From IMG/VR virus record IMGVR_UViG_3300033997_000092, positions 197,033-261,032 of that record: a stretch of DNA of 64,000 bases. The stretch is one strand, 5' to 3'. The notes beneath the pieces are model-generated. The model made no database searches, was not told the origin of the DNA, and saw nothing but the letters and a program-made list of their open reading frames with translations. Of this stretch, positions 36,784 to 60,958 are shown piece after piece. Positions within the stretch are counted from its first letter, which is position 1; each line of letters opens with the position of its first letter. The translations under genes and the position numbers were made by a program.

Positions 36784-36839
36784 GGTCTCCAAACAGCTTA
36801 AAACACATGATACTGTAAATCAAGTGTAGGAGGAACATT

Positions 36840-47019: not shown

Positions 47020-47023
47020 CCGT

Positions 47024-47050
47024 AAGAGGGAGCAATTTGCTCCCTCTTTT
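47024..47050 (+). terminator. Rho-independent terminator
   Basis: AAGAGGGAGCAA-T-TTGCTCCCTCTTTT. Confidence 0.85.
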
Positions 47051-47072
47051 CGTTTCTATGGTTCAGAGTCAT

Positions 47073-47160
47073 TATCTCTGTTATCCGTAGCAAAAACAGG
47101 ACACTATAAAACCGACTGTTTTGAGCTATAGTTATCTCTGTTATCCGTTGCATAAATAGG
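47073..47160 (+). repeat. Two copies, 60 bp apart, of the 28-bp element TATCTCTGTTATCCGTWGCAWAAAYAGG
   Basis: Copies at 47073-47100 and 47133-47160; third copy at 57849-57876. Confidence 0.85.
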
Positions 47161-47163
47161 CTA

Positions 47164-47193
47164 TTGACACCCACCCATATACTCTGCTATAAT
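47164..47193 (+). promoter_or_regulatory. Sigma70-type early promoter
   Basis: TTGACA-18 bp-TATAAT with extended -10 TG. Confidence 0.85.
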
Positions 47194-47204
47194 AAGCCCA
47201 TACG

Positions 47205-47519
47205 TTGAACAGGAGAAAGCATATTATGCTGCCTATACAGATAGCTACTGCAATCGTGATAAACAACAACGTACACCGCGCAATATCAGGCGTTAACAGA
47301 ACACGTTTGGGTATTGGAGCTGGTGGCTTTGTTGAACACCGAATCGTTCTTACTCCGCTCGGTCAGAAGTGCATGGACTTAGTGAAGCAGGACAGAGAGG
47401 CAATGCGTTCGGTTATTTACCAACAGCGTGTTGCTGAATTGAAAGCGCGTGGTATTACAAGACCGGGCGATATTATGAAATATACATACGATATGTTTGG
47501 AGGAAAAGTAAGATGGTAA
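47205..47519 (+). CDS. Early hypothetical protein (real start probably the downstream ATG, MLPIQ)
   Basis: First gene after the promoter; RBS AGGAG. Confidence 0.5.
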   Translation: MNRRKHIMLPIQIATAIVINNNVHRAISGVNRTRLGIGAGGFVEHRIVLTPLGQKCMDLVKQDREAMRSVIYQQRVAELKARGITRPGDIMKYTYDMFGGKVRW

Positions 47520-47959
47520 ACTCAAAAGATCTGAAAGCTGGTTCATTAATCGAAGCACAGTTCAACGACGGTCCGAATCGTTCAGGTATCGTAACTGAAC
47601 TCATACACCAGAAAGGAGCAAAAACTGAAGGTGAACTGTTCGGACTACGCGCCTTGTTTTATATGGAGGAGTTTAAAGCACACTGGAATATTTCTATTGA
47701 AACTTCTCAGGTAGTGTTTGTTGCTCCTACGCAGCCGGATTTACCTGCGTTACTTGACGAAGCCAAACAAGCTGTAATGCGCTGGACATGCACTATCGAC
47801 GGCGAAGAATCTGTGCCACTGAGCTTTGCTTCTATGACAATGCCAGAAGACGGCTTCAACCTAAGCAAAGAAGAAGCGGACAAACTAAAGTCGATGCAAG
47901 TCGGCGATAGTTTCGTTGCTGGTGATGAAGGTCAAGCACTGATTAAACGTGTAGCCTGA
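47513..47959 (+). CDS. Early protein with shared C-terminal module
   Basis: C-terminus LSKEEADKLKSMQVGD...LIKRVA. Confidence 0.55.
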   Translation: MVNSKDLKAGSLIEAQFNDGPNRSGIVTELIHQKGAKTEGELFGLRALFYMEEFKAHWNISIETSQVVFVAPTQPDLPALLDEAKQAVMRWTCTIDGEESVPLSFASMTMPEDGFNLSKEEADKLKSMQVGDSFVAGDEGQALIKRVA

Positions 47960-47970
47960 GTTTGATATTA

Positions 47971-47994
47971 GTAGGCATTCCACAGAGTGCCTGC
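47971..47994 (+). other. Conserved intergenic RNA hairpin, copy 1
   Basis: GTAGGCATT-ccacag-AGTGCCTGC. Confidence 0.75.
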
Positions 47995-48025
47995 ACTATA
48001 TGATTCTCAACACAAGGAAAACATT

Positions 48026-48460
48026 ATGTTCGATAACCAAAGCAAAGAAGTAAAATCAATCGCTACACGTTTGGCAAAAATCACCAAGCCTCAAATGGCA
48101 CTTGAACGTATGGCTCAGATTCTAAAAAGCAAAGGCATTAATGGTTATCCGCGTATAGGCCATTATGTACCAGACATCGGATTTATGATTCCATCCACTG
48201 TTCCTGGTTCTGAGTACATAACTGTACCTCTTGTGCCGAAAGTACACGAACACATCAAAGGCCTTATGGAGAATCACAAAGGCTTCATTGTGTTGCGCCA
48301 CAGACCCTTTTCTCTATTAGCTGGGGTTGCTTACCGTTCATCTGATGCGGTCATTGATGAACATGGTGTAGTACATACAGATAAACTTACATTCAACTGT
48401 GAGCGAGTAATGACACTCAGCTTAAACTTAGGCCCACGTTCTTCAAACGGAGATTTATAA
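48026..48460 (+). CDS. Early hypothetical protein (start revised)
   Basis: RBS AAGGA before MFDNQSK. Confidence 0.55.
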   Translation: MFDNQSKEVKSIATRLAKITKPQMALERMAQILKSKGINGYPRIGHYVPDIGFMIPSTVPGSEYITVPLVPKVHEHIKGLMENHKGFIVLRHRPFSLLAGVAYRSSDAVIDEHGVVHTDKLTFNCERVMTLSLNLGPRSSNGDL

Positions 48461-49029
48461 TGTCAGATGCACCAGCAAAATTTTTACCTGTTAAAGGTCG
48501 CGTATACACAACTAGCCAGATCGACAATGCGTTGGATCTACGAGACAGTCCTCATTTAGGTTTCTACAACATCGACAAGGTAAAGGATGTTGTTCAGGAT
48601 AGTCATTTGGCTGTCAATCTCAGCACTCTGCCTGGCTGGAAGGACCTGCGCTGGATATTTATTCGTGAAACACACGAATGGATTCCAATCTTCCAGATCG
48701 TGGAAGAAGATGAACCGAAGCTGTTAAAGCTGCTTCGGGAAAGCGATACTGAAGGTGAAGACGAAGAAGCCGTGTACTACCCACACATACCAGAGGGATT
48801 TGATGAAAAGGGCAGACCAGTTAAACCTGTGCATGTTCCTAAGACGTACACGTTGTACGATAAAGAACGGCATGTAGACACCGAAGAATCTCGTGGTCCG
48901 TTCAACTTACTGTCTCTGATTCACACCACTGATTGGTCTGACGAGGAGTTTGACAAAATCACCGATTTGACTGTTGGTCAAGTCGTTGAATTTGCCGAAG
49001 GTCGTCTGGTAGTAACTCGCGTGAGTTAA
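48460..49029 (+). CDS. Early protein with shared C-terminal module
   Basis: C-terminus WSDEEFDKITDLTVGQ...VVTRVS. Confidence 0.55.
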   Translation: MSDAPAKFLPVKGRVYTTSQIDNALDLRDSPHLGFYNIDKVKDVVQDSHLAVNLSTLPGWKDLRWIFIRETHEWIPIFQIVEEDEPKLLKLLRESDTEGEDEEAVYYPHIPEGFDEKGRPVKPVHVPKTYTLYDKERHVDTEESRGPFNLLSLIHTTDWSDEEFDKITDLTVGQVVEFAEGRLVVTRVS

Positions 49030-49035
49030 GATTAC

Positions 49036-49063
49036 TAATGGGCATTGTGTTCAGTGTCCATTG
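49036..49063 (+). other. Conserved intergenic RNA hairpin, copy 2
   Basis: TAATGGGCATT-gtgttc-AGTGTCCATTG. Confidence 0.75.
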
Positions 49064-49090
49064 TTAATACTCAAACAAAGGTAACAGGAT

Positions 49091-50239
49091 ATGCTACAAC
49101 ATTTTATAGTCTGCTTGATAGCAGGCTTCTTTATGTCGTTCTCGCGTTGGTTCAAACACAAAGATGCACCAGTTGACCCAAATGTACCAAAACACAGGCG
49201 GCCCCGACTAGAGGTAGTCAACTTTGAGAAGATAACACTCAAGGAATTTGGTATAAGCGCAATAGGCAATGTGTTTGTTGCTGCATTCAGTATGATATTC
49301 TTCTTCATCTACTTGACTACAGCCGCATCCGACTTTGAGATTTTGAATGGCCGTGTAACAGACAAACAGCGTGATGAAGTCAGTTGTAGCCATTCATACT
49401 CCTGCCCGCCTTGCCGTGACGTATGTACAAAACGCAGTGACGGAAGTAGGAGTTGTACACGGGAATGTTCAACGTGTTATAAACATCGTTATGATGTGGA
49501 CTGGGATGTGTTTACTACAGTAGGTACATTCACTATATCGCGTGGTCCTAACAATGAACAGGGATTAGATATGCCTCCGTACTGGGCGTCTTTACAAATA
49601 GGTGACCCAGCCTCGGCAGAACATACTTATGAAAACTTTTTGCTTATCGGCCAGAACAGCCTGAACTTCAAAGCCGAAAGTGTTGAAGAACGATTTGCAG
49701 GTTCGTTACACAAATACCCTGAAGTGTACAACTACTTTGATTATAACCGTGTACTCAACACAACCAAAGCAGGAACAAGCTGGCTCAATGATAAACTCAA
49801 TCGTTGGTTATCTGTCAAAGGCAGTCAGAAGCAGCTCAACATCATATACGTGTTGACTGAACAGAACCCTGAATACTTCTATGCCTTAATGTCGAAGTGG
49901 TCTGGCGGTAAAAAGAACGACTTGATTATAGTGATTGGTATGGACAACACAGGAAAAGAGATTCTTTGGTTCAATGCAAACACGTACGGTAAAGGCATGA
50001 ACAACCGCGAACTACTGACCGAACTGAAGTTTGCTTCTGTTGGTAAGCCGTTTGACGTAAGCTTGGTAGACAAGCATTTGGAATTAGTAGATGAAAAGTT
50101 TGTGCGTTTACCTGCAGAAACTTTCGCTCAGAAGAAATCTGAAGTTCAGATACCGCTGTGGTTCTCGCTTATCATGGCATCCTTAAATATGTTAGTTAGC
50201 TATTTCATTTCACGTAAAATGAGGGAAGTAAATTTATGA
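49091..50239 (+). CDS. Membrane protein with Cys-rich insert and TPM-like periplasmic domain
   Basis: N- and C-terminal TM helices; CSHSYSCPPC..C...C...C..C; W.GGKKNDLIIVIG. Confidence 0.6.
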   Translation: MLQHFIVCLIAGFFMSFSRWFKHKDAPVDPNVPKHRRPRLEVVNFEKITLKEFGISAIGNVFVAAFSMIFFFIYLTTAASDFEILNGRVTDKQRDEVSCSHSYSCPPCRDVCTKRSDGSRSCTRECSTCYKHRYDVDWDVFTTVGTFTISRGPNNEQGLDMPPYWASLQIGDPASAEHTYENFLLIGQNSLNFKAESVEERFAGSLHKYPEVYNYFDYNRVLNTTKAGTSWLNDKLNRWLSVKGSQKQLNIIYVLTEQNPEYFYALMSKWSGGKKNDLIIVIGMDNTGKEILWFNANTYGKGMNNRELLTELKFASVGKPFDVSLVDKHLELVDEKFVRLPAETFAQKKSEVQIPLWFSLIMASLNMLVSYFISRKMREVNL

Positions 50240-50817
50240 AAACGCAAAAAGGTTCGGCTCTGGGTATTATTCTGGGTGTGTTGGGTTTATTGTTTTTGGT
50301 TGTTGCTCTGATTGCAGCAATTTTCTTTCACTACAAAGACAGAGGCTCCGACTTCCAGGTCAAAATCGGTTCATCTTACCGTCTGGCTCAATCTTCATTG
50401 AGTAAGTACACACTCAAGATGCAGGATTTGAAGGGCCTGAAGAATATGGACACGCAGGCACTGAAGGATCTGTTAACTTCATCCAACACTTCACGTTACG
50501 GTGCAGACGGTTCTCAGGCTGCGGTACAGTGGTTGAAAGAAAACAACATTCCTGTCAACAACGAACTGGTAACAAAAATGGCTGTGTTGATTGACTCAGG
50601 CCGTGACGAATACGGTGTACAGCAGGAAAACTTAAATGCCGACTGTACCACATTCAAATATGAACTGGGTCGTAGCTGGAGCGGTCTGTGGTATTCAATC
50701 GCTGGTCGTCCTGATGAAAGCAACAAAAAAGAATTCAGCCTGTCTATGTGTGACCTGGTTCTGGATGCTGCTACAGTAGAAGCATACGAAACCAAACAAG
50801 CGAAGTCCGTGTTCTAA
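50236..50817 (+). CDS. LemA-like membrane-anchored helical protein
   Basis: MKTQKGS plus TM helix; QWLKENN...IDSGRDEY..QQ helical bundle pattern. Confidence 0.5.
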   Translation: MKTQKGSALGIILGVLGLLFLVVALIAAIFFHYKDRGSDFQVKIGSSYRLAQSSLSKYTLKMQDLKGLKNMDTQALKDLLTSSNTSRYGADGSQAAVQWLKENNIPVNNELVTKMAVLIDSGRDEYGVQQENLNADCTTFKYELGRSWSGLWYSIAGRPDESNKKEFSLSMCDLVLDAATVEAYETKQAKSVF

Positions 50818-50823
50818 CATTAC

Positions 50824-50851
50824 TAATAGGCATTCATAGTAGTGCCTATTG
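50824..50851 (+). other. Conserved intergenic RNA hairpin, copy 3
   Basis: TAATAGGCATT-catagt-AGTGCCTATTG. Confidence 0.75.
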
Positions 50852-50878
50852 TTGATGAACGAAAAAGGAAAACTAATC

Positions 50879-51253
50879 ATGTTAGTAGATGCAAAGAAAC
50901 TCAAAGCAGTAAAATTCTTGTCGATGCTGGACCAACTATACATTGACATTCTTGGTGCAGAGCCGAATACTATGGAACCAAACTCTCTGGTAGTGTTCAC
51001 GCAGTTTGCCGACTTAATAGATGACAATACGGAACAAAACATCCGTAACTTGTTTGAAGGCACGATTGACCTTGCGTGGACAATACAAGAAAACAGAACA
51101 TCGGTTCCGTTTTATTCGCAGGGCATTGCTGTATTCATTATCTATTTACTTAAACGTCACTGCAACCGTTTGAAAGCAGACTGGCCATTAGAGTGGCGTT
51201 TGCTTTCAGCCGTCGCTACAAACATCGGCGTATCATTGCGCGAAGGCGACTAA
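50879..51253 (+). CDS. Early hypothetical protein (start revised)
   Basis: RBS AAGGA before MLVDAKK. Confidence 0.5.
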   Translation: MLVDAKKLKAVKFLSMLDQLYIDILGAEPNTMEPNSLVVFTQFADLIDDNTEQNIRNLFEGTIDLAWTIQENRTSVPFYSQGIAVFIIYLLKRHCNRLKADWPLEWRLLSAVATNIGVSLREGD

Positions 51254-51281
51254 ATCAAATCTAAATTTTATCGAGGTATTT

Positions 51282-51914
51282 ATGAAAGTTTTAAGAATTG
51301 CTGTTGAAGGCAAACGTGTAGAAAAACCGCGCTGGACAAAAGAGACACCTGAAGAAAGACTGGCGAGTGAGCGTTTACCTACGTTCACCGTGTTCGGTAC
51401 TTCTGACAGAACAGACCCACGTATGCACATGGATATTATGGCAACGGCATCCATAATCCGTGGTGCTGCTGGTGCCCTGGGCGTGTCTCCTGAAGTGTTT
51501 ACGTCTGAGTTTAACTTTGAACGAAGTGACCACGAAGACAATATGCACACAATACACTTCTTACCAAAAGTAAAGCCTGGTGTACTGGCGCATCTGCAAT
51601 TTCCTGGCGATGACGAACCCCATCTAGTAATGGTTATTGCTGAAGTTCTGGAACGTCAAGGTGTAGTTTGGGAAAAACACGAACCTAATCGAGAAATCCG
51701 TCTTCTCAACAAGATTGATTTGCCTGATACAAACGCCCGTATACAATTTCCACAAGTTGACGGTTGGGTAGTAGCCAGTGTTATCAAAGAAGTAAAAAAC
51801 ACCAACGCCAGATCCATCCACAGTGCGAAATGGGAACCAGGTTTGGTGATTGGCAGTGATTGGTTCTTTGTAACGCATGAATCTCTGACACCTATTGATT
51901 TTGCTCAATGGTGA
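51282..51914 (+). CDS. Early hypothetical protein
   Basis: RBS GAGGT; 210 aa. Confidence 0.55.
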   Translation: MKVLRIAVEGKRVEKPRWTKETPEERLASERLPTFTVFGTSDRTDPRMHMDIMATASIIRGAAGALGVSPEVFTSEFNFERSDHEDNMHTIHFLPKVKPGVLAHLQFPGDDEPHLVMVIAEVLERQGVVWEKHEPNREIRLLNKIDLPDTNARIQFPQVDGWVVASVIKEVKNTNARSIHSAKWEPGLVIGSDWFFVTHESLTPIDFAQW

Positions 51915-51917
51915 TTT

Positions 51918-52094
51918 ATGTCAAACAGTGAAAAATCATTTGTAGTATCTACGCCGTTTAGCGAAGTGGTTATGTCACACCGTGATGTGCTGCGTAAATT
52001 CAAGTTCACGCCTGCTCAGAGTAAAACATTCTCTGGATTAGGCATCAATTCAACGATGTCAGTAGGCAAAACTAACATCAAGCGTAAGGAATAA
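51918..52094 (+). CDS. 58-aa protein, probable stand-alone copy of the shared C-terminal module (not in ORF track)
   Basis: MSNSEKSFVVSTPFSEVVMSHRDVLRKFKFTPAQSKTFSGLGINSTMSVGKTNIKRKE*; fills the operon gap. Confidence 0.6.
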   Translation: MSNSEKSFVVSTPFSEVVMSHRDVLRKFKFTPAQSKTFSGLGINSTMSVGKTNIKRKE

Positions 52095-52098
52095 CAAA

Positions 52099-52734
52099 AT
52101 GAAACCAGCTAACAATGCTCCTATGTACGCTGCACTGTATCCTGAATTGGCTGAGATATGCCGTAGCTTTGGTTATGCGCTTGCTGTTCACGGCACTATG
52201 TCACGCGATTTTGATATTGTGGCAATACCGTGGGCAGAAACAATGTCAGGCGGACCTGAAGACGTAGTTAAAGCGATCTGCAAACGCTTTGCAGTAAACA
52301 AAGTCTCGGGCGACCCAGTGATTATGAATCACGGACGAATCTGCTACAATTTGGCACTAATGGGTGAGTTCTTTTTCGACCTCAGTTTCATAGCAACTGA
52401 TTCTCCTGCTGTTAAGCTACGCGCAGGCCTGAACCAAGCTATCGAACTACTGGCTACTGCACTGCATGAGCCTGAGCAGATCACCGAAGAAGAAATCCAT
52501 GAGCTGCGTACTCTGGAACGTGAATCGGTCGGTGACTCTACTCCGATATGTGTACGACGTTTCACGTTGACTGTTGACGAAGATGCCGAAGATGTCTCTT
52601 ATGCTGCTATCAGAAAAAGAGCCGATGCTTTGGACCTGAATGATGAAGATCTGACAAACATTGCTCGCCTTGATGTTCAGGAAGAGCTTCCGATTCACGA
52701 AAATCCAATAGTTATAATCACCCGTATTGCATAA
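52099..52734 (+). CDS. Nucleotidyltransferase-fold-like N-domain plus shared C-terminal module
   Basis: GYALAVHGTMSRDFDIVAIPW (G[ST]..RDxD-like); C-terminus LNDEDLTNIARLDV...IITRIA. Confidence 0.55.
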   Translation: MKPANNAPMYAALYPELAEICRSFGYALAVHGTMSRDFDIVAIPWAETMSGGPEDVVKAICKRFAVNKVSGDPVIMNHGRICYNLALMGEFFFDLSFIATDSPAVKLRAGLNQAIELLATALHEPEQITEEEIHELRTLERESVGDSTPICVRRFTLTVDEDAEDVSYAAIRKRADALDLNDEDLTNIARLDVQEELPIHENPIVIITRIA

Positions 52735-52745
52735 GGAAACAGGCA

Positions 52746-53246
52746 ATGAAAGAATTCCACATTTTAACACACGAAAAAGAAATTCTCCGTGTAGTAGAAC
52801 GCAACTTAGTTGCTATTGAAGGTGTATTATGTATGCGGGCATATGCACCTAACGGTACTGTTATCAATGTAGCCGAATCTCGCATTGTCTACGGACACGA
52901 AGACACGCAAGTTTTAGAAACGATGCGTACTGGTAAAGTCAAAGTAAAAGACGTTGCCAGTTGGTGGCTGGGCTATATTGCTGTTTGCAGTGAGTTAGGT
53001 CCGTACAAAGAATACCGCGGCCGTGTTGCGAAAATCTGCGACGAACTTATTGAATTTGACAAACAGCTTCCACACATAGATGAACGTACTACGGAAGACG
53101 GTGCGAATGCCGCTGGCTATATGCAACGCATCTGGAGTACGCTTCCTGATGACCCAAGTATACACCGTCTGCCTCGCTGGTCATTATTGTGCGACCTGTG
53201 CAGTGAGTCGTGGGTATTTGAATTTGGAGAAAATGAAGATGATTGA
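52746..53246 (+). CDS. Hypothetical protein
   Basis: 166-aa ORF with RBS. Confidence 0.5.
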   Translation: MKEFHILTHEKEILRVVERNLVAIEGVLCMRAYAPNGTVINVAESRIVYGHEDTQVLETMRTGKVKVKDVASWWLGYIAVCSELGPYKEYRGRVAKICDELIEFDKQLPHIDERTTEDGANAAGYMQRIWSTLPDDPSIHRLPRWSLLCDLCSESWVFEFGENEDD

Positions 53247-53424
53247 AGCACAACTATTTGACCGTGTCAGAAAGATAGCCCGGTCTTCACACGTAGCGAT
53301 AATCACAGCTAGGGCGGACCAACCTAGCATGCGTGGTCCTGCTGATGTTTGGGTATTTACTCAACCGTCGAAGATAAATCCTGACGCTGTGTTTACTGTT
53401 ACACGCACTAAGCAACGTAAATAA
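53233..53424 (+). CDS. Small hypothetical protein (start revised)
   Basis: RBS GGAG; bridges the neighbouring genes. Confidence 0.4.
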   Translation: MKMIEAQLFDRVRKIARSSHVAIITARADQPSMRGPADVWVFTQPSKINPDAVFTVTRTKQRK

Positions 53425-53486
53425 TGTTCATGCGTATTCATTGGAGTACGCATTATAGATTGTTTAACTGGATAGGAAGGTTAAGT

Positions 53487-54146
53487 ATGTTAAAAGAACA
53501 CAAAGAGGATTTGGTACGTCAGTACCTGCCTACAATCAAAAGAATTGCGTACAGCCTGTTACGCAAATTGCCAAACACAATTCAGTTTGATGATTTGGTG
53601 CAGGCTGGGTCGATAGGTTTGCTTGAGTCGTTAGACAGATATGACCCAAATAACGAGGCTTCGTTTGGTACATTTGCTGGCATCCGTATTCATGGAGCTA
53701 TGCTTGATGAAGTGCGCCATAGCTCGTGGATTCCAAAGAACCTATATGCCAGACAGAAGTATGTCACAAGCGTATACGATTCTTTGGAGTCTACACTGTT
53801 TCGTAAACCGTCTTTGCCTGAGCTGGCTGAAGCACTGAATATGACTGTAGCCGAACTCAATGCCGAGTCTACTGCGCTTGGTCTTGAGATAGTTTACGGC
53901 AATAGCGTTGACTATCAATATGTTGACAATCAAGACCCTGTGGAGGAACAACAGTTTTACACCGACTTAGCTAAATCTGTTTTAGATTTGCCTGACAGGT
54001 ATTTGATGTTGATGCGTCTTTACTACTCTGCGGACAAAAACATGAAAGAGATTGGTGCAGCGTTGAATGTTAGCGAATCACGTATTTGTATCATGCACCG
54101 TACTGCTATCAAAATGGTTCAATCATCTATGCACAACTGGATTTAA
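53487..54146 (+). CDS. fliA: FliA/WhiG (sigma-28)-family RNA polymerase sigma factor
   Basis: DDLVQAGSIGLLE..DRYD....F.TFA.IRIHGAMLDEVR..WIP; region 4 LYY...NMKEIGAALNVSESRIC.MH; start at MLKEH after RBS AGGAAGG. Confidence 0.88.
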   Translation: MLKEHKEDLVRQYLPTIKRIAYSLLRKLPNTIQFDDLVQAGSIGLLESLDRYDPNNEASFGTFAGIRIHGAMLDEVRHSSWIPKNLYARQKYVTSVYDSLESTLFRKPSLPELAEALNMTVAELNAESTALGLEIVYGNSVDYQYVDNQDPVEEQQFYTDLAKSVLDLPDRYLMLMRLYYSADKNMKEIGAALNVSESRICIMHRTAIKMVQSSMHNWI

Positions 54147-54148
54147 TT

Positions 54149-54802
54149 ATGGAAACTTTAAACGATATTAAACAACTGTTTCACATGACTTTGATTCTGA
54201 TGTTTAACAAACACTGGAGGACGGTTTGTATTTTCTTGTGTCTGGCACTAGGTTTCTTTGGTTGGGGAAATATTTTGCTTTTCATTGTTGTAAGCGTCTG
54301 TGCCCAAGTTATGTATTTGCAAAACATAGATAAGCGGGAATTGGTACGGATGTGTAAGTTGACGTGCCATATATTACTGCCTGTCGCCATACTTACGACA
54401 ATCGTTATATCCGTGGCAATGTATTGGGGTCCAGCAGGTGAGCCTCCATCGGAAGTAGTCATAGAGACTATGAATAGTATACACACTACTATGCTTGGTA
54501 TTGCCATGTGTTTGCTGTCAGGCGCTATTATAGTCAATACTTACAGTGAATATGTTTCATTTGATAGAGGCTTTAACGTGGTATTCGGAACTCTGCTCAG
54601 GAAACCTGAAAGCCGCATTCCGTTTGTGTTGATAAGTGGCATCGAAATAGCCTTCATTATTCTGGAATTGACTTTCTATGTAGGTGTGCCTCTGATGGTA
54701 TCATGGGTACTGATGTATGTTTATGATATGCGTGTATTGCGTAAATCAAAACAGAAATCAAAGTCAGGTGTCGATAAGTTTATTCCAGCATTGCAAAATT
54801 AA
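54149..54802 (+). CDS. Polytopic membrane protein
   Basis: Five to six hydrophobic segments. Confidence 0.55.
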   Translation: METLNDIKQLFHMTLILMFNKHWRTVCIFLCLALGFFGWGNILLFIVVSVCAQVMYLQNIDKRELVRMCKLTCHILLPVAILTTIVISVAMYWGPAGEPPSEVVIETMNSIHTTMLGIAMCLLSGAIIVNTYSEYVSFDRGFNVVFGTLLRKPESRIPFVLISGIEIAFIILELTFYVGVPLMVSWVLMYVYDMRVLRKSKQKSKSGVDKFIPALQN

Positions 54803-54813
54803 AGGACAGCATC

Positions 54814-55290
54814 ATGGACTTGAGCCAAGTTAAAGAGCTATTCACTTACCTGAATTGCAACAATGTTTCTTACAAGTTCTTCACCGAAACTTGGTACATG
54901 GAAATTGAAGTGAAGCTTCAAGACACTACAATCAAATTTCTTGTTGAAGAACAGCACACGGCGTTGGGCAAAATCGTACTCAATCTTTTGGTTGAAGAAC
55001 CTTCAGGCTTCAATATGTTGTGTGCCGACGTTAGCTTTAAACTTAGCAGTGATCGAGGCTTAATAGATCACATTGCTCAGTATATTGGTAAGTTGGCTTA
55101 TTTACGTTATCGTGAGGGCAAATACATTGTTGTGAAAGAAACGATGGTCACAGAGAAACACGAAGTCGTTTTCTACGACAGCTTCCTTAATCATCTACAT
55201 GCCGCTGGCTTTATAACAACGGACTATTTCCAGCAACTGGAAGTTTCCTCACAAAAGGTAACAGTGTTTGTCGAATATGAGGAACAGTAA
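54814..55290 (+). CDS. Hypothetical protein
   Basis: ORF with RBS. Confidence 0.5.
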   Translation: MDLSQVKELFTYLNCNNVSYKFFTETWYMEIEVKLQDTTIKFLVEEQHTALGKIVLNLLVEEPSGFNMLCADVSFKLSSDRGLIDHIAQYIGKLAYLRYREGKYIVVKETMVTEKHEVVFYDSFLNHLHAAGFITTDYFQQLEVSSQKVTVFVEYEEQ

Positions 55291-55622
55291 TGGACGCACT
55301 CATTTGCCAACAAGCAATGTCCAAGTGTATGCTTATGATAAGCACCAGCAAAGAAGAACACAAAGACACTGTTGCCCGTTATTTCAGTCTTGCTCGTTCA
55401 GCGGTATTCAAGTTCTGTGGTGATGGACCTGAATGGGATCATGTGCTTGCTGCCCATAACAATGCACTCTATATGTTCCGTGAGAAGTTCGGTGAGTTTC
55501 GACACACTAATCGTATAGAATACAAGAGCAGACACTTAGGACGCAGTGTGTATCTGGTGACTAAAAACAATTCTATCATTGGATTTATAAGCGATGACAA
55601 TATACAAAATCCCAGTAGCTGA
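55290..55622 (+). CDS. Hypothetical protein
   Basis: Stop/start overlap. Confidence 0.5.
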   Translation: MDALICQQAMSKCMLMISTSKEEHKDTVARYFSLARSAVFKFCGDGPEWDHVLAAHNNALYMFREKFGEFRHTNRIEYKSRHLGRSVYLVTKNNSIIGFISDDNIQNPSS

Positions 55623-56253
55623 CTTTCCTAAATACGCGAGCTTGGTTCCTGCGAAGCATGTCGTTGTATCCGGTCCTGAATATGAAAACACTTACGACCC
55701 AAAAGTCGGCATCTGCGTTGTTAAAAATGTAGCTACGTCAGGCAAAGAGTATGTAAACTTTTCGGACTATTGCCACGAAGTTGCACACGCTGTATTGTTT
55801 GTGTTGACTGGACAGACGCACAGGCTAAGCATGCCTGAGTTTGGCATGCAAAATCCGATGGATTCAAAAGCTTGCCAATCTATGCGTATACTGGAAGTTG
55901 AAACACAGGTATTGGCTATACAGGCTGTGCTTCTGCAACAGTCTGGTATTCGATTCTGTAAATCTTCAATGTATAGAAAAGAATGTCAAGGGTTCCGACG
56001 ACTGAGCTTTGGTACGGATAGGCAGTGCCATTCAGATTTCCTGCCGATAAAAACAAAGATGCCTGTGGCACTTGAGCAGTATCTCGCGGAACACAAGTTT
56101 GTCAAAGGCAATCCTACAATGGAAGCGATGCACGACATCTGGACGTATCGTAGAACAAAAGCACAATTGACTATGCTTATGCAGATGACCAAGAAAGCAG
56201 AAGCCACGTATACAAAAGACCAGATTCAAGAAGCTCTGGCTCAATTACAATAA
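55594..56253 (+). CDS. HExxH metalloprotein (EpmC-like motif), paralogue of 60283..60948
   Basis: DYCHEVAH...HRL.MPEFG...EVETQV.AIQ. Confidence 0.55.
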   Translation: MTIYKIPVADFPKYASLVPAKHVVVSGPEYENTYDPKVGICVVKNVATSGKEYVNFSDYCHEVAHAVLFVLTGQTHRLSMPEFGMQNPMDSKACQSMRILEVETQVLAIQAVLLQQSGIRFCKSSMYRKECQGFRRLSFGTDRQCHSDFLPIKTKMPVALEQYLAEHKFVKGNPTMEAMHDIWTYRRTKAQLTMLMQMTKKAEATYTKDQIQEALAQLQ

Positions 56254-56254
56254 G

Positions 56255-56920
56255 GTGAACCGAATGAACGATGCCGTCATATTGAAATGCACAGAAGCAC
56301 GCCCAGTAGTGTGGTTAGAGTTGTCCATTTTGCCTAAGCGGTCTCCTATATGGCTACCACGTTTAATAACTGACCCGAATGACGAAGTTATACTGCGTGG
56401 TCTTGGATTGAAAGTTAACTATCTTGGTGACACATTGCTTGCTGACATGGGACCAAATTTAGAGGATTTTCATAATCCTAAATTTGAGTTGCTTCCTACA
56501 CAGCACATTTACTTTACCGATTCACATACTGCCAGTGAGAAGCGTTCGACAGCCAATTACTTTTTCGCGGACCACCTTATCCAAGTGAAGCCTGCTTCAG
56601 TGTTGGATGAAAATAAAGTCGAGTTGTTGCTGTGTAAATATAAGCTGACTATGAACTACAGTGGACACGGACATCCTAAACGTGAAGCGGTTATGGTCTG
56701 TTACGGCAAGTTACCTGATATTCCTACTGAGTGGCAGAATAGTTCTGAATACAGTAAAATTCTCGCTGAGTTTGATAGAAAACAAAACATAACTACGTTG
56801 GGCTCTTTTTTAGAGGCACCATGGGACACACACTTAGGCAGATGCAATCCTATACAGCAAAAGCTGCTGGAAAAGTTTGTAGAGATTAAATCAGGTACTA
56901 AAAGTGAAGGTGCTGTATGA
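56255..56920 (+). CDS. Hypothetical protein
   Basis: 221-aa ORF. Confidence 0.5.
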   Translation: MNRMNDAVILKCTEARPVVWLELSILPKRSPIWLPRLITDPNDEVILRGLGLKVNYLGDTLLADMGPNLEDFHNPKFELLPTQHIYFTDSHTASEKRSTANYFFADHLIQVKPASVLDENKVELLLCKYKLTMNYSGHGHPKREAVMVCYGKLPDIPTEWQNSSEYSKILAEFDRKQNITTLGSFLEAPWDTHLGRCNPIQQKLLEKFVEIKSGTKSEGAV

Positions 56921-57450
56921 TAAAGACAAGCAGAACTATAAGCAATCGGGTCTGGCTTGTCTCAGGTAGCTTCTGTGCTATGCGCTGGAGTGTGTGGAAA
57001 CAGTCAGGTCAGCCTGAAGGAATCGAAGGCTACTTGGAGCTAACTGACGGCAGGACAACAGTTCACATCCACAGTGCCGATCCTGCTGCTGTAGGAAAAG
57101 AGAAGTCGCTAGAGGATTTCGTAGCTAAGTTGAATATAATGCTACAGATGCTTGGCAATTTCATCAAAATAGATCCAACCAAAGACACTGACTTTGTTGA
57201 TAGAGTCTGGTTGAATCCAGAAGAAAGCCACTTCTCCGGATCTATGGTAGTTTATTTGAAGCATATAAACGACAAAGAATACCATTTAGGGTTGAAGATT
57301 TCCTGCTGTAAGTATTCTTTAACCTTCTATCCACACAATAGTAGTACAGTCACAAAAACTAAGTTGATTGCAAAACGTATCAGTGTCCAGATTAACAAGA
57401 TGCTTGATGCCATCAACGAACTGAATCAGTACAAAGACCCTCTGGTCTAA
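56917..57450 (+). CDS. Hypothetical protein with an apparent internal duplication
   Basis: NRVWL..SGS...YLELTDG..TV.IH repeated as DRVWL..FSGS...LKISCC..SL.FY. Confidence 0.5.
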   Translation: MIKTSRTISNRVWLVSGSFCAMRWSVWKQSGQPEGIEGYLELTDGRTTVHIHSADPAAVGKEKSLEDFVAKLNIMLQMLGNFIKIDPTKDTDFVDRVWLNPEESHFSGSMVVYLKHINDKEYHLGLKISCCKYSLTFYPHNSSTVTKTKLIAKRISVQINKMLDAINELNQYKDPLV

Positions 57451-57481
57451 CTGTAACGGCAATACTGCCACAAGATGCCAC

Positions 57482-57793
57482 ATGCAAGGCAAACAAACGG
57501 AGACATTTATGTCAGAACAAATCAAAGCACTGAAACAAGAAGGCTACGCTGTGATTGAGACCTCACAGATTGTAGAAGGCACAGCTTACAAAAAGCTGGA
57601 CGGCAATATACTGGACCTGCATGAAAAGGGACACAGCCGTATTGCTGTAGTTACGAATGCAGACAATCCACATCTGGGCGACCTGCAGCACAGAGCAGAC
57701 CGTTTAGCTAAAGTGATTCCAGGTCTTCAGGTAGTCGTCCACGCTGGTACGCAAGTCGTAGCACCATGCTACTCTGAGCAAGCAGAACAGTAA
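57482..57793 (+). CDS. Hypothetical protein
   Basis: Last gene before the terminator. Confidence 0.5.
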   Translation: MQGKQTETFMSEQIKALKQEGYAVIETSQIVEGTAYKKLDGNILDLHEKGHSRIAVVTNADNPHLGDLQHRADRLAKVIPGLQVVVHAGTQVVAPCYSEQAEQ

Positions 57794-57801
57794 ATCGTGT
57801 G

Positions 57802-57825
57802 AAAGGAGCCTCAGCGCTCCTTTTT
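57802..57825 (+). terminator. Rho-independent terminator
   Basis: AAAGGAGC-CTCAGC-GCTCCTTTTT. Confidence 0.8.
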
Positions 57826-57848
57826 GCGTTTCTACGGCATATAGCACG

Positions 57849-57909
57849 TATCTCTGTTATCCGTAGCAAAAACAGGCTATTGACATCCGGTTAAATTCCA
57901 TGCTATAAT
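57849..57909 (+). promoter_or_regulatory. Sigma70-type early promoter with the conserved 28-bp upstream element
   Basis: TATCTCTGTTATCCGTAGCAAAAACAGG-CTA-TTGACA(57880)-18 bp-TATAAT(57904), extended -10 TG. Confidence 0.85.
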
Positions 57910-57952
57910 ATACCCACAGCAATAGTGCTTTATTAACACTGGGTATATATAC

Positions 57953-58279
57953 ATGAAAGCTACAATACAGAAACAAGTCAACTCATTGATTGCCGACGGA
58001 ACTATCACTTTTATCGAAAAAGCACAGTGGGGTTCGCTTTACTCTATAAAGGGAATCAATGCGAAAAAGATTCGCCTGTTTATCTCAGACGATGGTGATC
58101 AGTGGAGACTGGCGGGATATGACAAACGCGGTCTGTGGTTTAGTTTAGGTGACCGTGCCGATTTAAGCAATGGCATGAATGTAAGCACCTCGTCATTTAT
58201 GCAAAGCATCCCAGCACTATCTATGGGATACAAATCAGGCGCTGCTTGGTTGAAAGCTGAAATCTTAACTCAAATATAA
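57953..58279 (+). CDS. Early hypothetical protein
   Basis: First gene after the promoter. Confidence 0.55.
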   Translation: MKATIQKQVNSLIADGTITFIEKAQWGSLYSIKGINAKKIRLFISDDGDQWRLAGYDKRGLWFSLGDRADLSNGMNVSTSSFMQSIPALSMGYKSGAAWLKAEILTQI

Positions 58280-58293
58280 TCTGGAGACGCATC

Positions 58294-58644
58294 ATGTCGC
58301 AAGTATCAATCATCGAATTATCAGTTGGTGTTGTATCCGTCAAACTGGAAACAGGCTCACGCACGTTAGCCAATATGTTTGGTGTTTATCTAAAAGACTC
58401 CAATGACCCGGAGTATTACAGAGAGGAACAAAAGTTCTCGGGTGAACACGCATACGGAATGGCGATGGAACATCTAGTCGCCTATCTACGTATAGGTCCC
58501 CGCGACAAGGACATCAACTATATCCTAGACAAAATCGAGGAAGGTTACGCAGACTGGAAACGAGACTGCGAAGACTTCAAAGAACGTGGTAATAACTTCG
58601 ATTTACCATTTCACCTGTATATCACAATAGCCGTTCAAAAATAA
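58294..58644 (+). CDS. Early hypothetical protein
   Basis: RBS GGAG. Confidence 0.55.
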   Translation: MSQVSIIELSVGVVSVKLETGSRTLANMFGVYLKDSNDPEYYREEQKFSGEHAYGMAMEHLVAYLRIGPRDKDINYILDKIEEGYADWKRDCEDFKERGNNFDLPFHLYITIAVQK

Positions 58645-58655
58645 GGAGAACGACA

Positions 58656-59309
58656 ATGGCCCATTATGTATTCTATTTTTTAGATGGTGAAGCAGTTATC
58701 ATCGAAGCAGACGACGGAGGCAAAGACGATGCCTCTATCGCTTTCAACAAACAGTTTAGTCGTGGTGCGTTGCAGGCAGTTGACTTTTATGAGCGATTCG
58801 ATAATGCCGTAACCAAAGCTGACCTTAAGTATTCGTTTGATGACGGCGCGTGGCACAAAATCATCTGCTACGATACTGTTATGCACTTCAACCCGAATAA
58901 AGCAGAAGGCACGTTCCGTAATCTCTGGTCGTGGTTAGCTGGTTCGTTTACAAAAGGCGAAGGCTATTCTACTGTGCCTGTTGTAGTATTCGATGATAAG
59001 GGTTTTGATGATCAGGGACCTGCATCAGGCAAAGAAGTCAGTGTCCCTTACGGCGTTGATAAAGGCAGTGTGTTTGAAATGACAAACACTGACAACGAAT
59101 TTGACAAAATCTGGAAGACGTTACCTCGCAAACGTACAAATGCCGACTACGTTGCAGAGTGTTCACGCATTTTAGGTCGCACTGATCAGGCACAGGCCAC
59201 TGTTTATTTTCCTGCTGACCCGGATAGTCCTGACGAAGTTATGATTCAGGCTAACTGTGATTTTGTCCATAACCATGTTACGTTTTCAGTGTATCAAGGG
59301 GATTGTTAA
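58656..59309 (+). CDS. Early hypothetical protein
   Basis: RBS AAGGAG. Confidence 0.55.
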   Translation: MAHYVFYFLDGEAVIIEADDGGKDDASIAFNKQFSRGALQAVDFYERFDNAVTKADLKYSFDDGAWHKIICYDTVMHFNPNKAEGTFRNLWSWLAGSFTKGEGYSTVPVVVFDDKGFDDQGPASGKEVSVPYGVDKGSVFEMTNTDNEFDKIWKTLPRKRTNADYVAECSRILGRTDQAQATVYFPADPDSPDEVMIQANCDFVHNHVTFSVYQGDC

Positions 59310-59599
59310 TGGAAGACGATTCAGTTAATGAAATCACTGTCCTGGAACTTGAAGAACAGATATTCCAGTTAGAAGGAATCGTGGTACGAATACGTGCTCC
59401 TTCAAAGTCAAAAGTTCTTGAGTATGGTTATACTCGCTGTGCTCCTGGCAATCAAAAAGTTTCGCTGTGGTTGAATACACGGGTTGCTCCTTGTTTACGC
59501 GGACTTGAGATTAGTGTAATTAGTGGTAGTTTCGGTTCGGTACTTGGCCAAACTACTTTATCTAACCTGCGTGATAGTTACGTTAGACGCTCTAAATAA
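59303..59599 (+). CDS. Hypothetical protein
   Basis: 98-aa operon ORF. Confidence 0.5.
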   Translation: MLMEDDSVNEITVLELEEQIFQLEGIVVRIRAPSKSKVLEYGYTRCAPGNQKVSLWLNTRVAPCLRGLEISVISGSFGSVLGQTTLSNLRDSYVRRSK

Positions 59600-59609
59600 G
59601 GAGACTGAT

Positions 59610-59948
59610 ATGCCTGTTGTAATGATTAAGCTTGTAGTTCCTGGTGCGACGGTTGAACGTGTGTTCAAGTTCAGTAACACGTTTCCTCCAAGTGCAGCCA
59701 CTGCATTAAACGATGTGATGCCTGAAGACCCACACAAAGCCTCATCTAAGGCAGCAACAATCCTGTGTGATTTGATCGGTCGTAACCCACGTGACCCTCA
59801 CCTTCACTACATGCTGTTGAGTGTCGATGAAGCGGTCCGTTCACATCAAGGCCGTGAGCAAGCCCATAAGATTCGCGCACTGGGTAAAGAGTCAACGCTG
59901 CCTTTTCACTTTAAGTTTTCTATAGAAAGCTTGGAGCGTGAAGATTAA
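59610..59948 (+). CDS. Hypothetical protein (start revised)
   Basis: RBS AAGGAG before MPVVMIK. Confidence 0.5.
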   Translation: MPVVMIKLVVPGATVERVFKFSNTFPPSAATALNDVMPEDPHKASSKAATILCDLIGRNPRDPHLHYMLLSVDEAVRSHQGREQAHKIRALGKESTLPFHFKFSIESLERED

Positions 59949-59962
59949 CGATCGGAGAGTTT

Positions 59963-60220
59963 ATGGATACATACCAGCCGGCGAAAAGTCCAATCAACGG
60001 CGTTGTGCTTTTCGATATTGCATTAAAACATCTATCTGGTAACAACGTAGGAGCAACGGATGTTGACTTCCTGCGTAACTCAGATGCGATTGCTGAAATC
60101 CGTTTCATGCTGAAGGCCAGCGGCTGGAAACATGATGAAAACTATGTACGCCAAGTTATGCGTATTATGTATCACAAAGTCAAAGCACACCAGTTCTTGA
60201 TAGAGCTGGAAAGTTCTTGA
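59963..60220 (+). CDS. Hypothetical protein
   Basis: RBS GGAG. Confidence 0.5.
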   Translation: MDTYQPAKSPINGVVLFDIALKHLSGNNVGATDVDFLRNSDAIAEIRFMLKASGWKHDENYVRQVMRIMYHKVKAHQFLIELESS

Positions 60221-60233
60221 TTGTGATTTACTC

Positions 60234-60257
60234 GTAGGCATTCGCAACAGTGCCTAC
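60234..60257 (+). other. Conserved intergenic RNA hairpin, copy 4
   Basis: GTAGGCATT-cgcaac-AGTGCCTAC. Confidence 0.75.
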
Positions 60258-60282
60258 TATGAAAATCATACGAGGAAATATC

Positions 60283-60948: not shown

Positions 60949-60958
60949 GTAAACTACC

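What the first reader, a model, noticed from the sequence alone, without database searches (positions are those of the whole stretch)
47957..60270. Family of four covarying intergenic RNA hairpins (TRGGCATT-N6-AGTGYCY) in the early operons
Seen: four copies at 47971, 49036, 50824 and 60234. Each starts 6-13 nt after a stop codon and ends about 25-32 nt before the next start. All keep the same U.G wobble (GCAUU/AGUGY) and a 6-nt variable loop. Copy 2 shows a compensatory A-U to G-C change plus a G-C to G.U change, and the stems extend imperfectly outward (e.g. GAGT...ACTC, GTGATTT...AAATCAT). None has a U-tract, so they are not terminators. All lie downstream of the two sigma70 promoters. Inference: conserved wobble pairs and covariation point to an RNA-level element rather than a DNA operator. 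Candidates are RNase III-type processing/stabilising sites (as in T7 early mRNA) or a binding site for a phage post-transcriptional regulator.
Basis: partly seen in the sequence, partly recalled or inferred. Interest (0 to 1): 0.75.

Follow-up and report, generated by a model that had tools for sequence, protein, structure and literature searches.

The report
T7-type RNase III hairpins, jumbo phage
Five conserved RNA hairpins between early genes of an uncultivated 261-kb phage match, in sequence and in shape, the sites where host RNase III cuts phage T7 early mRNA, so they are most likely mRNA-processing signals: a textbook kind of element found in a phage group where it had not been described.

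Summary
The four copies are exactly where stated, all on the + strand, with none expected by chance. I found a fifth copy (53430-53453, in front of a phage sigma-factor gene) and one decayed copy (51908-51940).

In 17 non-redundant copies from this phage and three related metagenomic contigs:
- 152 of 153 stem positions pair.
- 5 of 9 pairs show compensatory changes.
- The three top pairs (A-U, U.G, U-A) never vary, while the 6-nt loop varies freely.

The U-A/U.G top is the published "distal box" that E. coli RNase III binds in T7 R1.1 RNA.

Most copies share the fold computed for T7 R1.1: a 9-bp upper stem, a 2x3 internal loop, then an 8-10-bp lower stem. Copies 2 and 3 instead resemble T7 R1.3.

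- A covariance model built only from the window copies picks five known T7 RNase III sites as its top five hits in the T7 genome.
- A model built only from T7 sites picks window copies 4, 5 and 1 as its top three hits.

The phage has no RNase III gene, so the host enzyme would act.

This is a new member of a known kind.

The parts
47957..48009 (+). Hairpin 1. Upper stem 47971-47979/47986-47994, loop 47980-47985, 2x3 internal loop, then an interrupted lower stem. Predicted RNase III cut near 47997. Lies between the stop at 47957-59 and the ATG at 48026.
   Evidence: hit by the T7-only model R3 as third-best in the window
49029..49071 (+). Hairpin 2 (type B). An 11-bp stem 49036-49046/49053-49063, loop 49047-49052, a 1x1 mismatch at 49035/49064, then 4-6 further bp. 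Predicted cut near 49064. Lies between the stop at 49027-29 and the ATG at 49091.
50818..50857 (+). Hairpin 3 (type B). An 11-bp stem 50824-50834/50841-50851, loop 50835-50840, a 1x1 mismatch at 50823/50852, then 5 bp. Predicted cut near 50852. Lies between the stop at 50815-17 and the ATG at 50879.
53418..53466 (+). Upper stem 53430-53438/53445-53453, loop 53439-53444, 2x3 internal loop, 1 bp, 1x1 mismatch, then an 8-bp lower stem. Predicted cut near 53456. Lies between the stop at 53422-24 and the ATG at 53487 of a sigma70-family factor gene.
   Evidence: second-best hit of the T7-only model R3, E 0.026, all 17 model pairs formed
60214..60276 (+). Hairpin 4 (type C). Upper stem 60234-60242/60249-60257, loop 60243-60248, 2x3 internal loop, 1 bp, 1x1 mismatch, then an 8-bp lower stem 60222-60229/60263-60270. 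An outer 6-bp helix pairs 60214-60219 with 60271-60276 and covers the Shine-Dalgarno of the gene at 60283. Predicted cut near 60260.
   Evidence: best hit of the T7-only model R3 (36.7 bits, E 2e-6); its best ungapped matches in all of T7 are R1.1 and R18.5
51908..51940 (+). Decayed copy of the type-C site. It keeps the lower stem (GTGATTT/AAATCAT) and part of the 3' arm, but the 5' arm of the upper stem is missing. It overlaps a stop/start junction.
47137..47193 (+). Early promoter P1. A conserved 24-nt upstream element is followed by TTGACA-18-TATAAT with an extended -10. It drives the operon that holds hairpins 1, 2, 3 and 5.
57853..57909 (+). Early promoter P2, with the same upstream element and consensus hexamers. 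It drives the operon that holds hairpin 4.
47024..47048 (+). Intrinsic terminator that closes the preceding unit, just upstream of P1.
57802..57829 (+). Intrinsic terminator (hairpin plus T-run). It ends the P1 operon just upstream of P2.

Best explanation
The hairpins are T7-type processing signals for the host's RNase III.

Inferred from the sequence: host RNA polymerase starts at two consensus sigma70 promoters and makes two long early transcripts. One runs about 47.2-57.8 kb, the other from 57.9 kb on. Between cistrons the RNA folds into a bipartite hairpin of about 20-24 bp.

Inferred from the T7 and E. coli biochemistry, not measured here:
- RNase III docks on the helix, using the invariant U-A/U.G pairs under the loop as its distal box.
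- It cuts about 12 nt 3' of the loop.
- In copies 1, 4 and 5 the cut falls in the 3' side of the asymmetric internal loop, so only one strand is cleaved.
- In copies 2 and 3 it falls at a 1x1 mismatch in an almost continuous helix, as in T7 R1.3.
- The upstream mRNA then ends in a hairpin that protects it from 3' exonucleases.
- The downstream mRNA starts 25-30 nt before its start codon, freed from the upstream strand.

In copy 4 this release would unmask a Shine-Dalgarno sequence that the uncut transcript pairs (inference from the fold).
For: 1. The family is real and strand-specific.

2. The structure is selected. In 17 non-redundant copies, 152/153 cells pair and 5/9 pairs carry compensatory changes. 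The covariation score is 0.494 against 0.243 +/- 0.031 in shuffles (0/500 reach it) and at most 0.185 when partners are slid.

3. The three top pairs A-U, U.G, U-A are invariant in 17/17, while the 6-nt loop varies. Pertzev & Nicholson 2006 (PMC1540722) report three things for R1.1-derived RNA: the UA/UG distal box is a positive binding determinant of E. coli RNase III, UG-to-GU is strongly inhibitory, and loop sequence is irrelevant.

4. The architecture matches. Copies 4 and 5 and several relatives give 9 bp, a 2x3 loop, 1 bp, a 1x1 mismatch and then 8-10 bp, the same result as computed for T7 R1.1. Copies 2 and 3 resemble T7 R1.3. Total helix length is 17-24 bp. That is about the two helical turns cited for RNase III substrates (PMC3867540).

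5. Cross-detection works both ways. Model R1, built from the window copies only, gives as its top five hits in the whole T7 genome the intercistronic hairpins before genes 18.5, 1.1, 0.5, 0.3 and 4.7. Model R3, built from seven T7 sites only, gives window copies 4 (E 2e-6), 5 (E 0.026) and 1 as its top three hits in the window. It finds nothing significant in the other 197 kb of the genome. In a relative it hits the type-C copies at E 1e-5.

6. The context is that of T7: intercistronic sites in long early operons read from host-type promoters.

7. The phage has no RNase III gene, so the host enzyme would act.
Against: - There is no experimental evidence. No transcript 5'/3' ends could be obtained; the 'RNA' runs are wastewater metagenome contigs and showed no molecule ends.
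- The host is unknown, so its RNase III preferences are assumed to resemble E. coli's. The distal box is not a universally conserved sequence among RNase III substrates (PMC3867540).
- The T7-only model scores copies 2 and 3 below its reporting threshold and copy 1 only at E 1.8. Their assignment rests on membership in the same family.
- The proximal box was not evaluated rigorously.
- The T7 cleavage coordinates I used to place the cut are from memory of Dunn & Studier 1983, not from a tool.
Confidence: 0.8

Rival explanations
1. The hairpins are operators for a sequence- or structure-specific RNA-binding protein, phage-encoded or host. The protein would repress or couple translation of the downstream cistron, or act as an antiterminator loading site (nut-like).
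For: - Each hairpin sits at a constant short distance (about 30 nt) before the next start codon.
- The top of the helix is invariant.
- In copy 4 the extended helix covers the Shine-Dalgarno sequence.
Against: - The loop, the usual specific determinant (boxB, MS2, the gp43 operator), varies freely in sequence.
- No boxA-like partner is conserved across the sub-types.
- One operon holds four copies, which a processive antiterminator would not need.
- The same element occurs in unrelated phages (Lu11, Aeh1, T7) that have no evident shared regulator.
- The invariant part is fully explained by the RNase III distal box (PMC1540722).
Confidence: 0.07
2. The hairpins are uncleaved RNA stabilisers or insulators, acting as REP-like 3' exonuclease barriers or ribosome/transcription punctuation without any endonuclease.
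For: - They are stable hairpins (-17 to -22 kcal/mol) directly after stop codons and lack a U-tract.
- RNase III can also bind without cutting (PMC3867540, PMC1540722).
Against: - An exonuclease barrier does not need an invariant U.G wobble, a fixed 6-nt loop length, or a 2x3 internal loop at a fixed distance.
- Those features are the ones shared with cleaved T7 sites.
Confidence: 0.08
3. The elements act mainly at the DNA level. They would be short repeats serving as recombination junctions for shuffling gene cassettes (like PeSLs), or single-strand DNA hairpins for replication or priming.
For: - Gene content between hairpins differs among relatives, with breakpoints at the hairpins.
- The two most similar copies (2 and 3) bracket a two-gene cassette. 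That cassette is absent from two relatives and has homologues in unrelated phage families.
- Metagenome contigs tend to break near the hairpins.
Against: - An invariant T.G mismatch on one strand (A.C on the other) and G.U-type one-sided changes have no rationale in duplex or cruciform DNA.
- The compensatory changes preserve pairing, not sequence identity, and sequence identity is what homologous recombination would need.
- All copies are in the sense orientation.
- Junction use may be a by-product of these being the only shared intergenic sequences.
Confidence: 0.05

Closest known systems
Bacteriophage T7 early RNase III processing signals (R0.3, R0.5, R1.1, R1.3, R4.7, R18.5)
   Same: - Both are intercistronic sites in long early transcripts made by host RNA polymerase.
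- Both are bipartite hairpins of about two helical turns.
- Both have a 9-bp upper stem ending in A-U, U.G, U-A under a 6-nt apical region.
- Both have an asymmetric internal loop flanked by ACUC and UAUGA (copy 4).
- Both have a GUGAU../..AUCA lower stem.
- Covariance models built from either set detect the other.
   Different: - The host phage is an unrelated 261-kb myovirus-like jumbo phage, with only 30-36% protein identity to Phage NCTB, PaBG and Lu11.
- The middle of the upper stem differs (GUAGGC against AAGGUC).
- Copies 2 and 3 have their own flanks.
- No T7-like protein kinase or phage RNA polymerase context was looked for.
- Cleavage is untested.
PeSLs (promoter-early stem-loops) of T4-type phages (PMC2839356, PMC4122927)
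   Same: Both are short conserved intergenic regulatory motifs in early or hyperplastic regions that coincide with insertion, deletion and replacement junctions between close relatives.
   Different: A PeSL is a terminator stem-loop fused to an early promoter. The hairpins here carry no promoter and no U-tract. The PeSL-like units of this genome are instead the terminator plus conserved promoter at 47024-47193 and 57802-57909.
Lambda-type nut sites (boxA plus boxB)
   Same: Both are small RNA hairpins in early transcripts downstream of early promoters.
   Different: boxB has a 5-bp stem and a conserved pentaloop read by N, with one site per operon. Here the loop is variable, the stem is long and bipartite, and one operon holds four copies.
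REP/BIME-type intergenic palindromes of enterobacteria
   Same: Both are repeated intergenic hairpins after stop codons that can stabilise upstream mRNA.
   Different: REPs have an unrelated consensus, occur in both orientations and often in pairs, and are linked to RAYT transposases. None of this is seen here.

Membership tests
T7-type RNase III processing signal | RNA hairpin or helix of about two helical turns (about 20-22 bp), formed from coaxial upper and lower stems | tested here: met
   Constrained folds give 17-24 bp for the five window copies and 19-23 bp for relatives. The same script gives 20-24 bp for T7 R0.5, R1.1, R1.3, R4.7 and R18.5. The + strand folds far better than the - strand.
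T7-type RNase III processing signal | Distal box: two base pairs about 11-12 bp from the scissile bond, canonically U-A plus U.G in R1.1 (PMC1540722, PMC3867540) | tested here: met
   U.G and U-A are invariant in 17/17 copies, directly under a variable 6-nt loop. The helix discontinuity lies 9-11 bp below them. That places the expected cut 12 nt from the loop, as in T7. The T7 cut positions are from memory.
T7-type RNase III processing signal | Internal loop or mismatch at the target site that limits cleavage to one strand and leaves a 3' hairpin | tested here: met
   Copies 1, 4 and 5 and most L114 copies have a 2x3 internal loop after 9 bp, identical to the fold computed for T7 R1.1. Copies 2 and 3 have a 1x1 mismatch after 11 bp, like T7 R1.3 after 12 bp.
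T7-type RNase III processing signal | Proximal box free of antideterminant G-C pairs at the critical positions | tested here: inconclusive
   The four positions next to the predicted cut are A/U-rich or unpaired in all copies. I could not place the published box positions exactly, because the figure of PMC1540722 is not held.
T7-type RNase III processing signal | Similarity in sequence and structure to experimentally defined T7 sites | tested here: met
   R1 (window copies only) gives five T7 RNase III sites as the top five hits in T7. R3 (T7 sites only) gives copies 4, 5 and 1 as the top three hits in the window. Copies 2 and 3 are not reported by R3.
T7-type RNase III processing signal | Intercistronic position in polycistronic early mRNA made from host-type promoters | tested here: met
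   Consensus sigma70 promoters lie at 47164 and 57880 and terminators at 47024 and 57802. Every hairpin lies between a stop codon and the next start codon.
T7-type RNase III processing signal | Actual cleavage by RNase III in vivo or in vitro | not testable with these tools
   Only metagenome contigs were available and no molecule ends were seen.
PeSL (promoter-early stem-loop) | Stem-loop terminator fused to an early sigma70-type promoter | tested here: not met
   There is no U-tract, and no promoter-like site above background adjoins the hairpins.
nut/boxB antitermination site | Conserved loop sequence and an adjacent boxA | tested here: not met
   Loop columns are not conserved, and no element is shared by all sub-types outside the stem.
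Any Rfam family | Match at the gathering score | tested here: not met
   The window gives no hit at gathering. Region 47000-61000 gives only chance-level hits at E<=1. T7 itself gives no hit, so Rfam simply has no model for this kind of element.

The most novel reading that the evidence does not exclude
The T7-type RNase III hairpin may be a portable module that moves horizontally with gene cassettes among unrelated phage families: T7-like podoviruses, T4-like Aeh1, Lu11-like and this jumbo lineage. It would serve both as an mRNA insulator/processing site and as the microhomology at which cassettes are exchanged, an RNase III-site counterpart of PeSLs.

This would explain three things:
- Non-essential parts (the ACUC/UAUGA loop flanks, the GUGAU lower stem) are shared with T7.
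- Breakpoints between relatives fall at hairpins.
- Copies 2 and 3 bracket a widely travelled two-gene cassette.
Probability: 0.25. Interest if true: 0.65.

Novelty: new member of a known kind. Interest (0 to 1): 0.5.

Why it matters
RNase III processing of early mRNA is a textbook feature of T7-like phages. It is not described for jumbo myoviruses in anything my capped literature searches returned.

If the prediction holds:
- It gives a sequence and structure signature that can annotate operon punctuation in uncultivated phages: CAUU-N6-AGUG on top of a bipartite helix. Rfam has no such model.
- It predicts the real mRNA units of this phage's early region, including a separately processed sigma-factor message.
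- It adds natural variants to the small set of RNase III insulators used in synthetic biology (PMC3643576).
- Similarity to T7 sites beyond what the enzyme needs raises a testable question: horizontal spread or convergence.

Tried and rejected
- **Near-identical phage records.** None were found. Relatives came from exact-protein look-ups instead.
- **Motif scan of viral contigs.** It gave 91 single-hit loci, which I first took for chance. Re-analysis shows a mixture. Of 75 unique hits, 24 have no stem extension, while 46 have at least 2 extra pairs, against about 19% expected. My crude ORF calls placed many of these inside or antisense to ORFs. I could not resolve this, so I base no claim on these loci except for multi-copy or annotated cases (Lu11, Aeh1, L039).
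- **Locus L113 (P0006).** It is a plasmid/ICE-like context, not a related phage.
- **Model R2.** Built from 17 lineage copies, it is too lineage-specific. T7 sites are still its top two hits, but at E about 1.
- **The genome search with R3 on the own genome.** It returned nothing because its first-look filter missed the sites. I tiled the genome and ran cmsearch instead.
- **Read laying.** It gave contigs only, with no ends.
- **PeSL, nut/boxB, REP and N4-type hairpin promoters.** Considered and rejected on anatomy. N4 hairpins have 3-nt loops and need a virion RNA polymerase; this point is from memory.
- **A phage-encoded RNase III.** None was found.
- **Generic structural scan for bipartite hairpins.** Not specific enough: 134 hits against about 75 in shuffles.
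- **Older T7 papers.** Attempts to read them for exact cleavage coordinates failed because they are not held.
Full report
**Observation.** The motif TRGGCATT-N6-AGTGYCY occurs four times in the window, at 47972, 49039, 50827 and 60235. All copies are on the + strand, and none was found in 100 dinucleotide-preserving shuffles.

The window is the last 64 kb of a complete 261,032-bp virus record with terminal repeats. That genome has no other strict copy on either strand.

Each copy lies between a stop codon and the next ATG, and none is followed by a U-tract. Folded as RNA, the + strand gives z-scores of -2.6 to -3.8. The complementary strand gives only -0.6 to -1.5, because the G.U pairs become A.C mismatches.

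Two perfect extended -10 sigma70 promoters lie upstream, at 47164-47193 and 57880-57909. Each is preceded by an intrinsic terminator.

**More copies.** A covariance model built from the four copies (R1) and a purely structural scan both found a fifth copy at 53430-53453.
- It keeps the ATT-N6-AGT top with the U.G wobble.
- Its lower stem differs from the consensus by three compensatory double changes.
- It starts 6 nt after a stop codon and ends 33 nt before the ATG (53487) of a sigma70-family factor gene (Pfam region 2 at 5.7e-17, region 4 at 3e-7).

A model built from T7 sites later exposed a decayed copy at 51908-51940. It keeps the lower stem but has lost the 5' arm of the upper stem.

**What the genome is.** It has 43% G+C. 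Its tail and baseplate proteins are 30-36% identical to those of Phage NCTB, PaBG, Lu11 and the Erwinia/Dickeya jumbo phages. It comes from a subsurface metagenome, and near relatives occur in wastewater and biofilm runs.

**Relatives and covariation.** Homologues of the 189-aa protein encoded at 48460-49029 led to metagenomic contigs of relatives at 92%, 70% and 56% protein identity.

These contigs carry the same hairpins. All are on the gene strand and intergenic, and a 46-kb contig holds eight within about 7 kb.

Results for 17 non-redundant copies (alignment A3; counts):
- 152 of 153 cells form standard pairs.
- Five of nine pairs show changes on both sides (24 cells).
- The covariation score is 0.494. 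Shuffles give 0.243 +/- 0.031 and none of 500 reaches the observed value. Sliding the partners gives at most 0.185.
- The three pairs nearest the loop (A-U, U.G, U-A) never vary, whereas the six loop positions are not conserved.

One caveat applies. The copies were collected with a structure-aware model, which leans the counts towards pairing. Against that, all hits are intergenic and co-oriented, and the plain pattern scan finds the same sites.

**Identification.** Folding the intercistronic regions of phage T7 showed that its RNase III sites look like these hairpins.
- The hairpin between T7 genes 1 and 1.1 has the same CATT-N6-AGTG top.
- It has the same ACTC and TATGA flanks as window copy 4, and a nearly identical apical region.
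- The hairpin before T7 gene 0.5 shares the GTGAT.../...ATCAC lower stem.

I tested this resemblance in both directions.
- **R1 against T7.** R1 was built only from window copies. I ran it over the whole T7 genome, both strands, without filters. Its five best hits are 36816-36866, 5847-5897, 1427-1478, 852-899 and 13853-13902, all on the + strand. By the T7 gene map these lie before genes 18.5, 1.1, 0.5, 0.3 and 4.7. Those are the places of RNase III sites R18.5, R1.1, R0.5, R0.3 and R4.7. The site names and positions come from established knowledge (Dunn & Studier 1983). The origin of R1.1 between genes 1.0 and 1.1 is confirmed in PMC6121014. The use of R0.5 and R1.1 as T7 early RNase III sites is confirmed in PMC3643576.
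- **R3 against the window.** R3 was built only from seven T7 sites, with upper and lower stems. I ran it over the window without filters. Its top three hits are copy 4 (36.7 bits, E 2e-6), copy 5 (E 0.026) and copy 1 (E 1.8). All 17 model pairs are formed in copies 4 and 5.
- **R3 elsewhere.** It finds nothing significant in the remaining 197 kb of the genome. It hits the type-C copies of the 70% relative at E 1e-5 and 4e-5.
- **Ungapped comparison.** The 46-mer around copy 4 has its two best ungapped matches in all of T7 at R1.1 (28/46) and R18.5 (27/46).

**Architecture.** I used constrained folds with one script for all sites.
- Copies 4 and 5 and several relatives give a 9-bp upper stem, a 2x3 internal loop, one pair, a 1x1 mismatch and an 8-10-bp lower stem. 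The script returns exactly this for T7 R1.1.
- Copy 1 has the same 9 bp and 2x3 loop, with a more interrupted lower stem.
- Copies 2 and 3 have 11 bp, a 1x1 mismatch and 4-5 more pairs. They resemble T7 R1.3 (12 bp, then 1x1).
- Total helix length is 17-24 bp.

**Fit to published RNase III rules.**
- E. coli RNase III substrates are about two helical turns long. [quoted passage not shown] Internal loops restrict cleavage to one strand, leaving a protective 3' hairpin (PMC3867540, PMC1540722).
- For the R1.1-derived minimal substrate, the canonical UA/UG distal box is a positive binding determinant. Every substitution there lowers binding, UG to GU strongly so. The loop sequence and position do not matter (PMC1540722).
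- This is precisely the pattern of conservation seen here: invariant U-A and U.G, and a free loop.
- In T7 the cut falls at the 12th nucleotide 3' of the apical region. I derived this from remembered coordinates 5887 and 1468 laid, so allow +/-1-2 nt.
- The same count places cuts near 47997, 49064, 50852, 53456 and 60260.

**Mechanism proposed.**
- The two early transcripts would be cut by the host enzyme into five and at least two pieces. The phage itself has no RNase III domain.
- Each upstream piece would end in the upper hairpin.
- Each downstream piece would start 25-30 nt before its start codon.
- In copy 4 an outer 6-bp helix pairs 60214-60219 with 60271-60276, which includes the Shine-Dalgarno sequence of the gene at 60283. 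Cleavage could therefore activate translation. This is inference.

**What could not be shown.** No stranded RNA data exist for this phage. The runs labelled RNA are wastewater metagenome assemblies. Laying four of them on 47000-52999 gave fragmented contigs and no molecule ends.

The host is unknown. Copies 2 and 3 are tied to T7 only through their family membership. Rfam has no model for T7 RNase III sites (T7 gives no hit), so the negative Rfam results carry no weight.

**Wider distribution.** Hairpins with the same top occur elsewhere, in sense orientation and between annotated genes.
- Pseudomonas phage Lu11 has four copies.
- Aeromonas phage Aeh1 has two copies flanking Aeh1p106.
- A 177-kb viral contig has six copies.

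The 91 single pattern hits in viral contigs are a mixture of chance and real hairpins, and I did not resolve their gene context.

**Mosaic junctions.** Gene content between hairpins differs among the relatives, with breakpoints at the hairpins.
- The cassette 49091-50817 plus hairpin 3 is present only in this phage and its 92% relative. So is the sigma gene plus hairpin 5.
- Other genes are gained or lost next to hairpins in the 70% and 56% relatives.
- That cassette's 382-aa protein (49091-50239) has homologues in T5-like, Vi1-like, T4-like and Serratia jumbo phages. Its 193-aa partner matches phage family phrog_1383.

This may be a by-product of shared intergenic sequence, or a second role for the hairpins. 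It is the basis of the novel reading.

**Verdict.** The family is real and selected as an RNA structure. By every test available it belongs with the T7-type RNase III processing signals. It is a known kind of element in a new phage group. Confidence is 0.8, pending cleavage or end-mapping experiments.

Noticed in passing
window 47085-47108, 47137-47193, 57853-57909; also genome 1666, 150214, 150759, 158687, 158817, 170099: A family of nine early promoters, all on the + strand. A conserved 24-nt element (TCTGTTATCCGTWGCAWAAAYAGG) sits directly upstream of near-consensus sigma70 hexamers. In the window each promoter follows a strong terminator, a PeSL-like terminator-promoter cassette. Metagenome contigs switch partners exactly at the edges of the element (47133/34 and 47168/69).
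   Followed up: partly
window 53487-54146: A phage-encoded sigma70-family factor (regions 2 and 4) lies directly downstream of the newly found fifth hairpin. The gene and its hairpin are present in the 92% relative but not detected in the 70% and 56% relatives.
   Followed up: partly
window 51908-51940: A decayed copy of the type-C hairpin. The lower stem and part of the 3' arm remain and the 5' arm of the upper stem is gone. It overlaps the stop of one gene and the start of the next.
   Followed up: partly
genome G000:C1:2672-2695 (outside the window): A hairpin with the same bipartite architecture (9 bp, 2x3 loop, 1 bp, 1x1, 9 bp) and a related stem (GTGTAGGTA/TGCCTACAC), but an A-U/U.G top. 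It lies downstream of the early promoter at 1666 and is not detected by any of the three models. It may be a divergent sixth site.
   Followed up: partly
window 49091-50817: A two-gene cassette (phrog_2087 membrane-like protein plus phrog_1383 'virion structural protein') is bracketed by the two most similar hairpins. It is absent from two relatives. Its 382-aa protein has homologues (37-42% identity) in T5-like, Vi1-like, T4-like Aeromonas and Serratia jumbo phages.
   Followed up: partly
window 60214-60219 with 60271-60276: An outer helix of hairpin 4 pairs the end of the upstream ORF with the Shine-Dalgarno (GAGGA) of the gene at 60283. This suggests translation that depends on processing.
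   Followed up: no
L110 (Lu11 270.7-280.5 kb), L116 (Aeh1 69.5-72.5 kb), L039: The same CATT-N6-AGTG-topped hairpins occur in several copies, intergenic and in sense orientation, in cultured phages Lu11 and Aeh1 and in a 177-kb viral contig. They are not annotated in the GenBank records.
   Followed up: partly
window 60959-62089 and 37844-39040: A radical-SAM (QueE-like) gene and a thymidylate synthase gene lie in the early region.
   Followed up: no
L001-L091 (viral contigs pattern hits): Many pattern hits with clearly extended stems fell inside or antisense to ORFs by my crude ORF calling (for example L005, L053 and their near-duplicates). Either the ORF calls are wrong or a second, unrelated use of this palindrome exists.
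   Followed up: no
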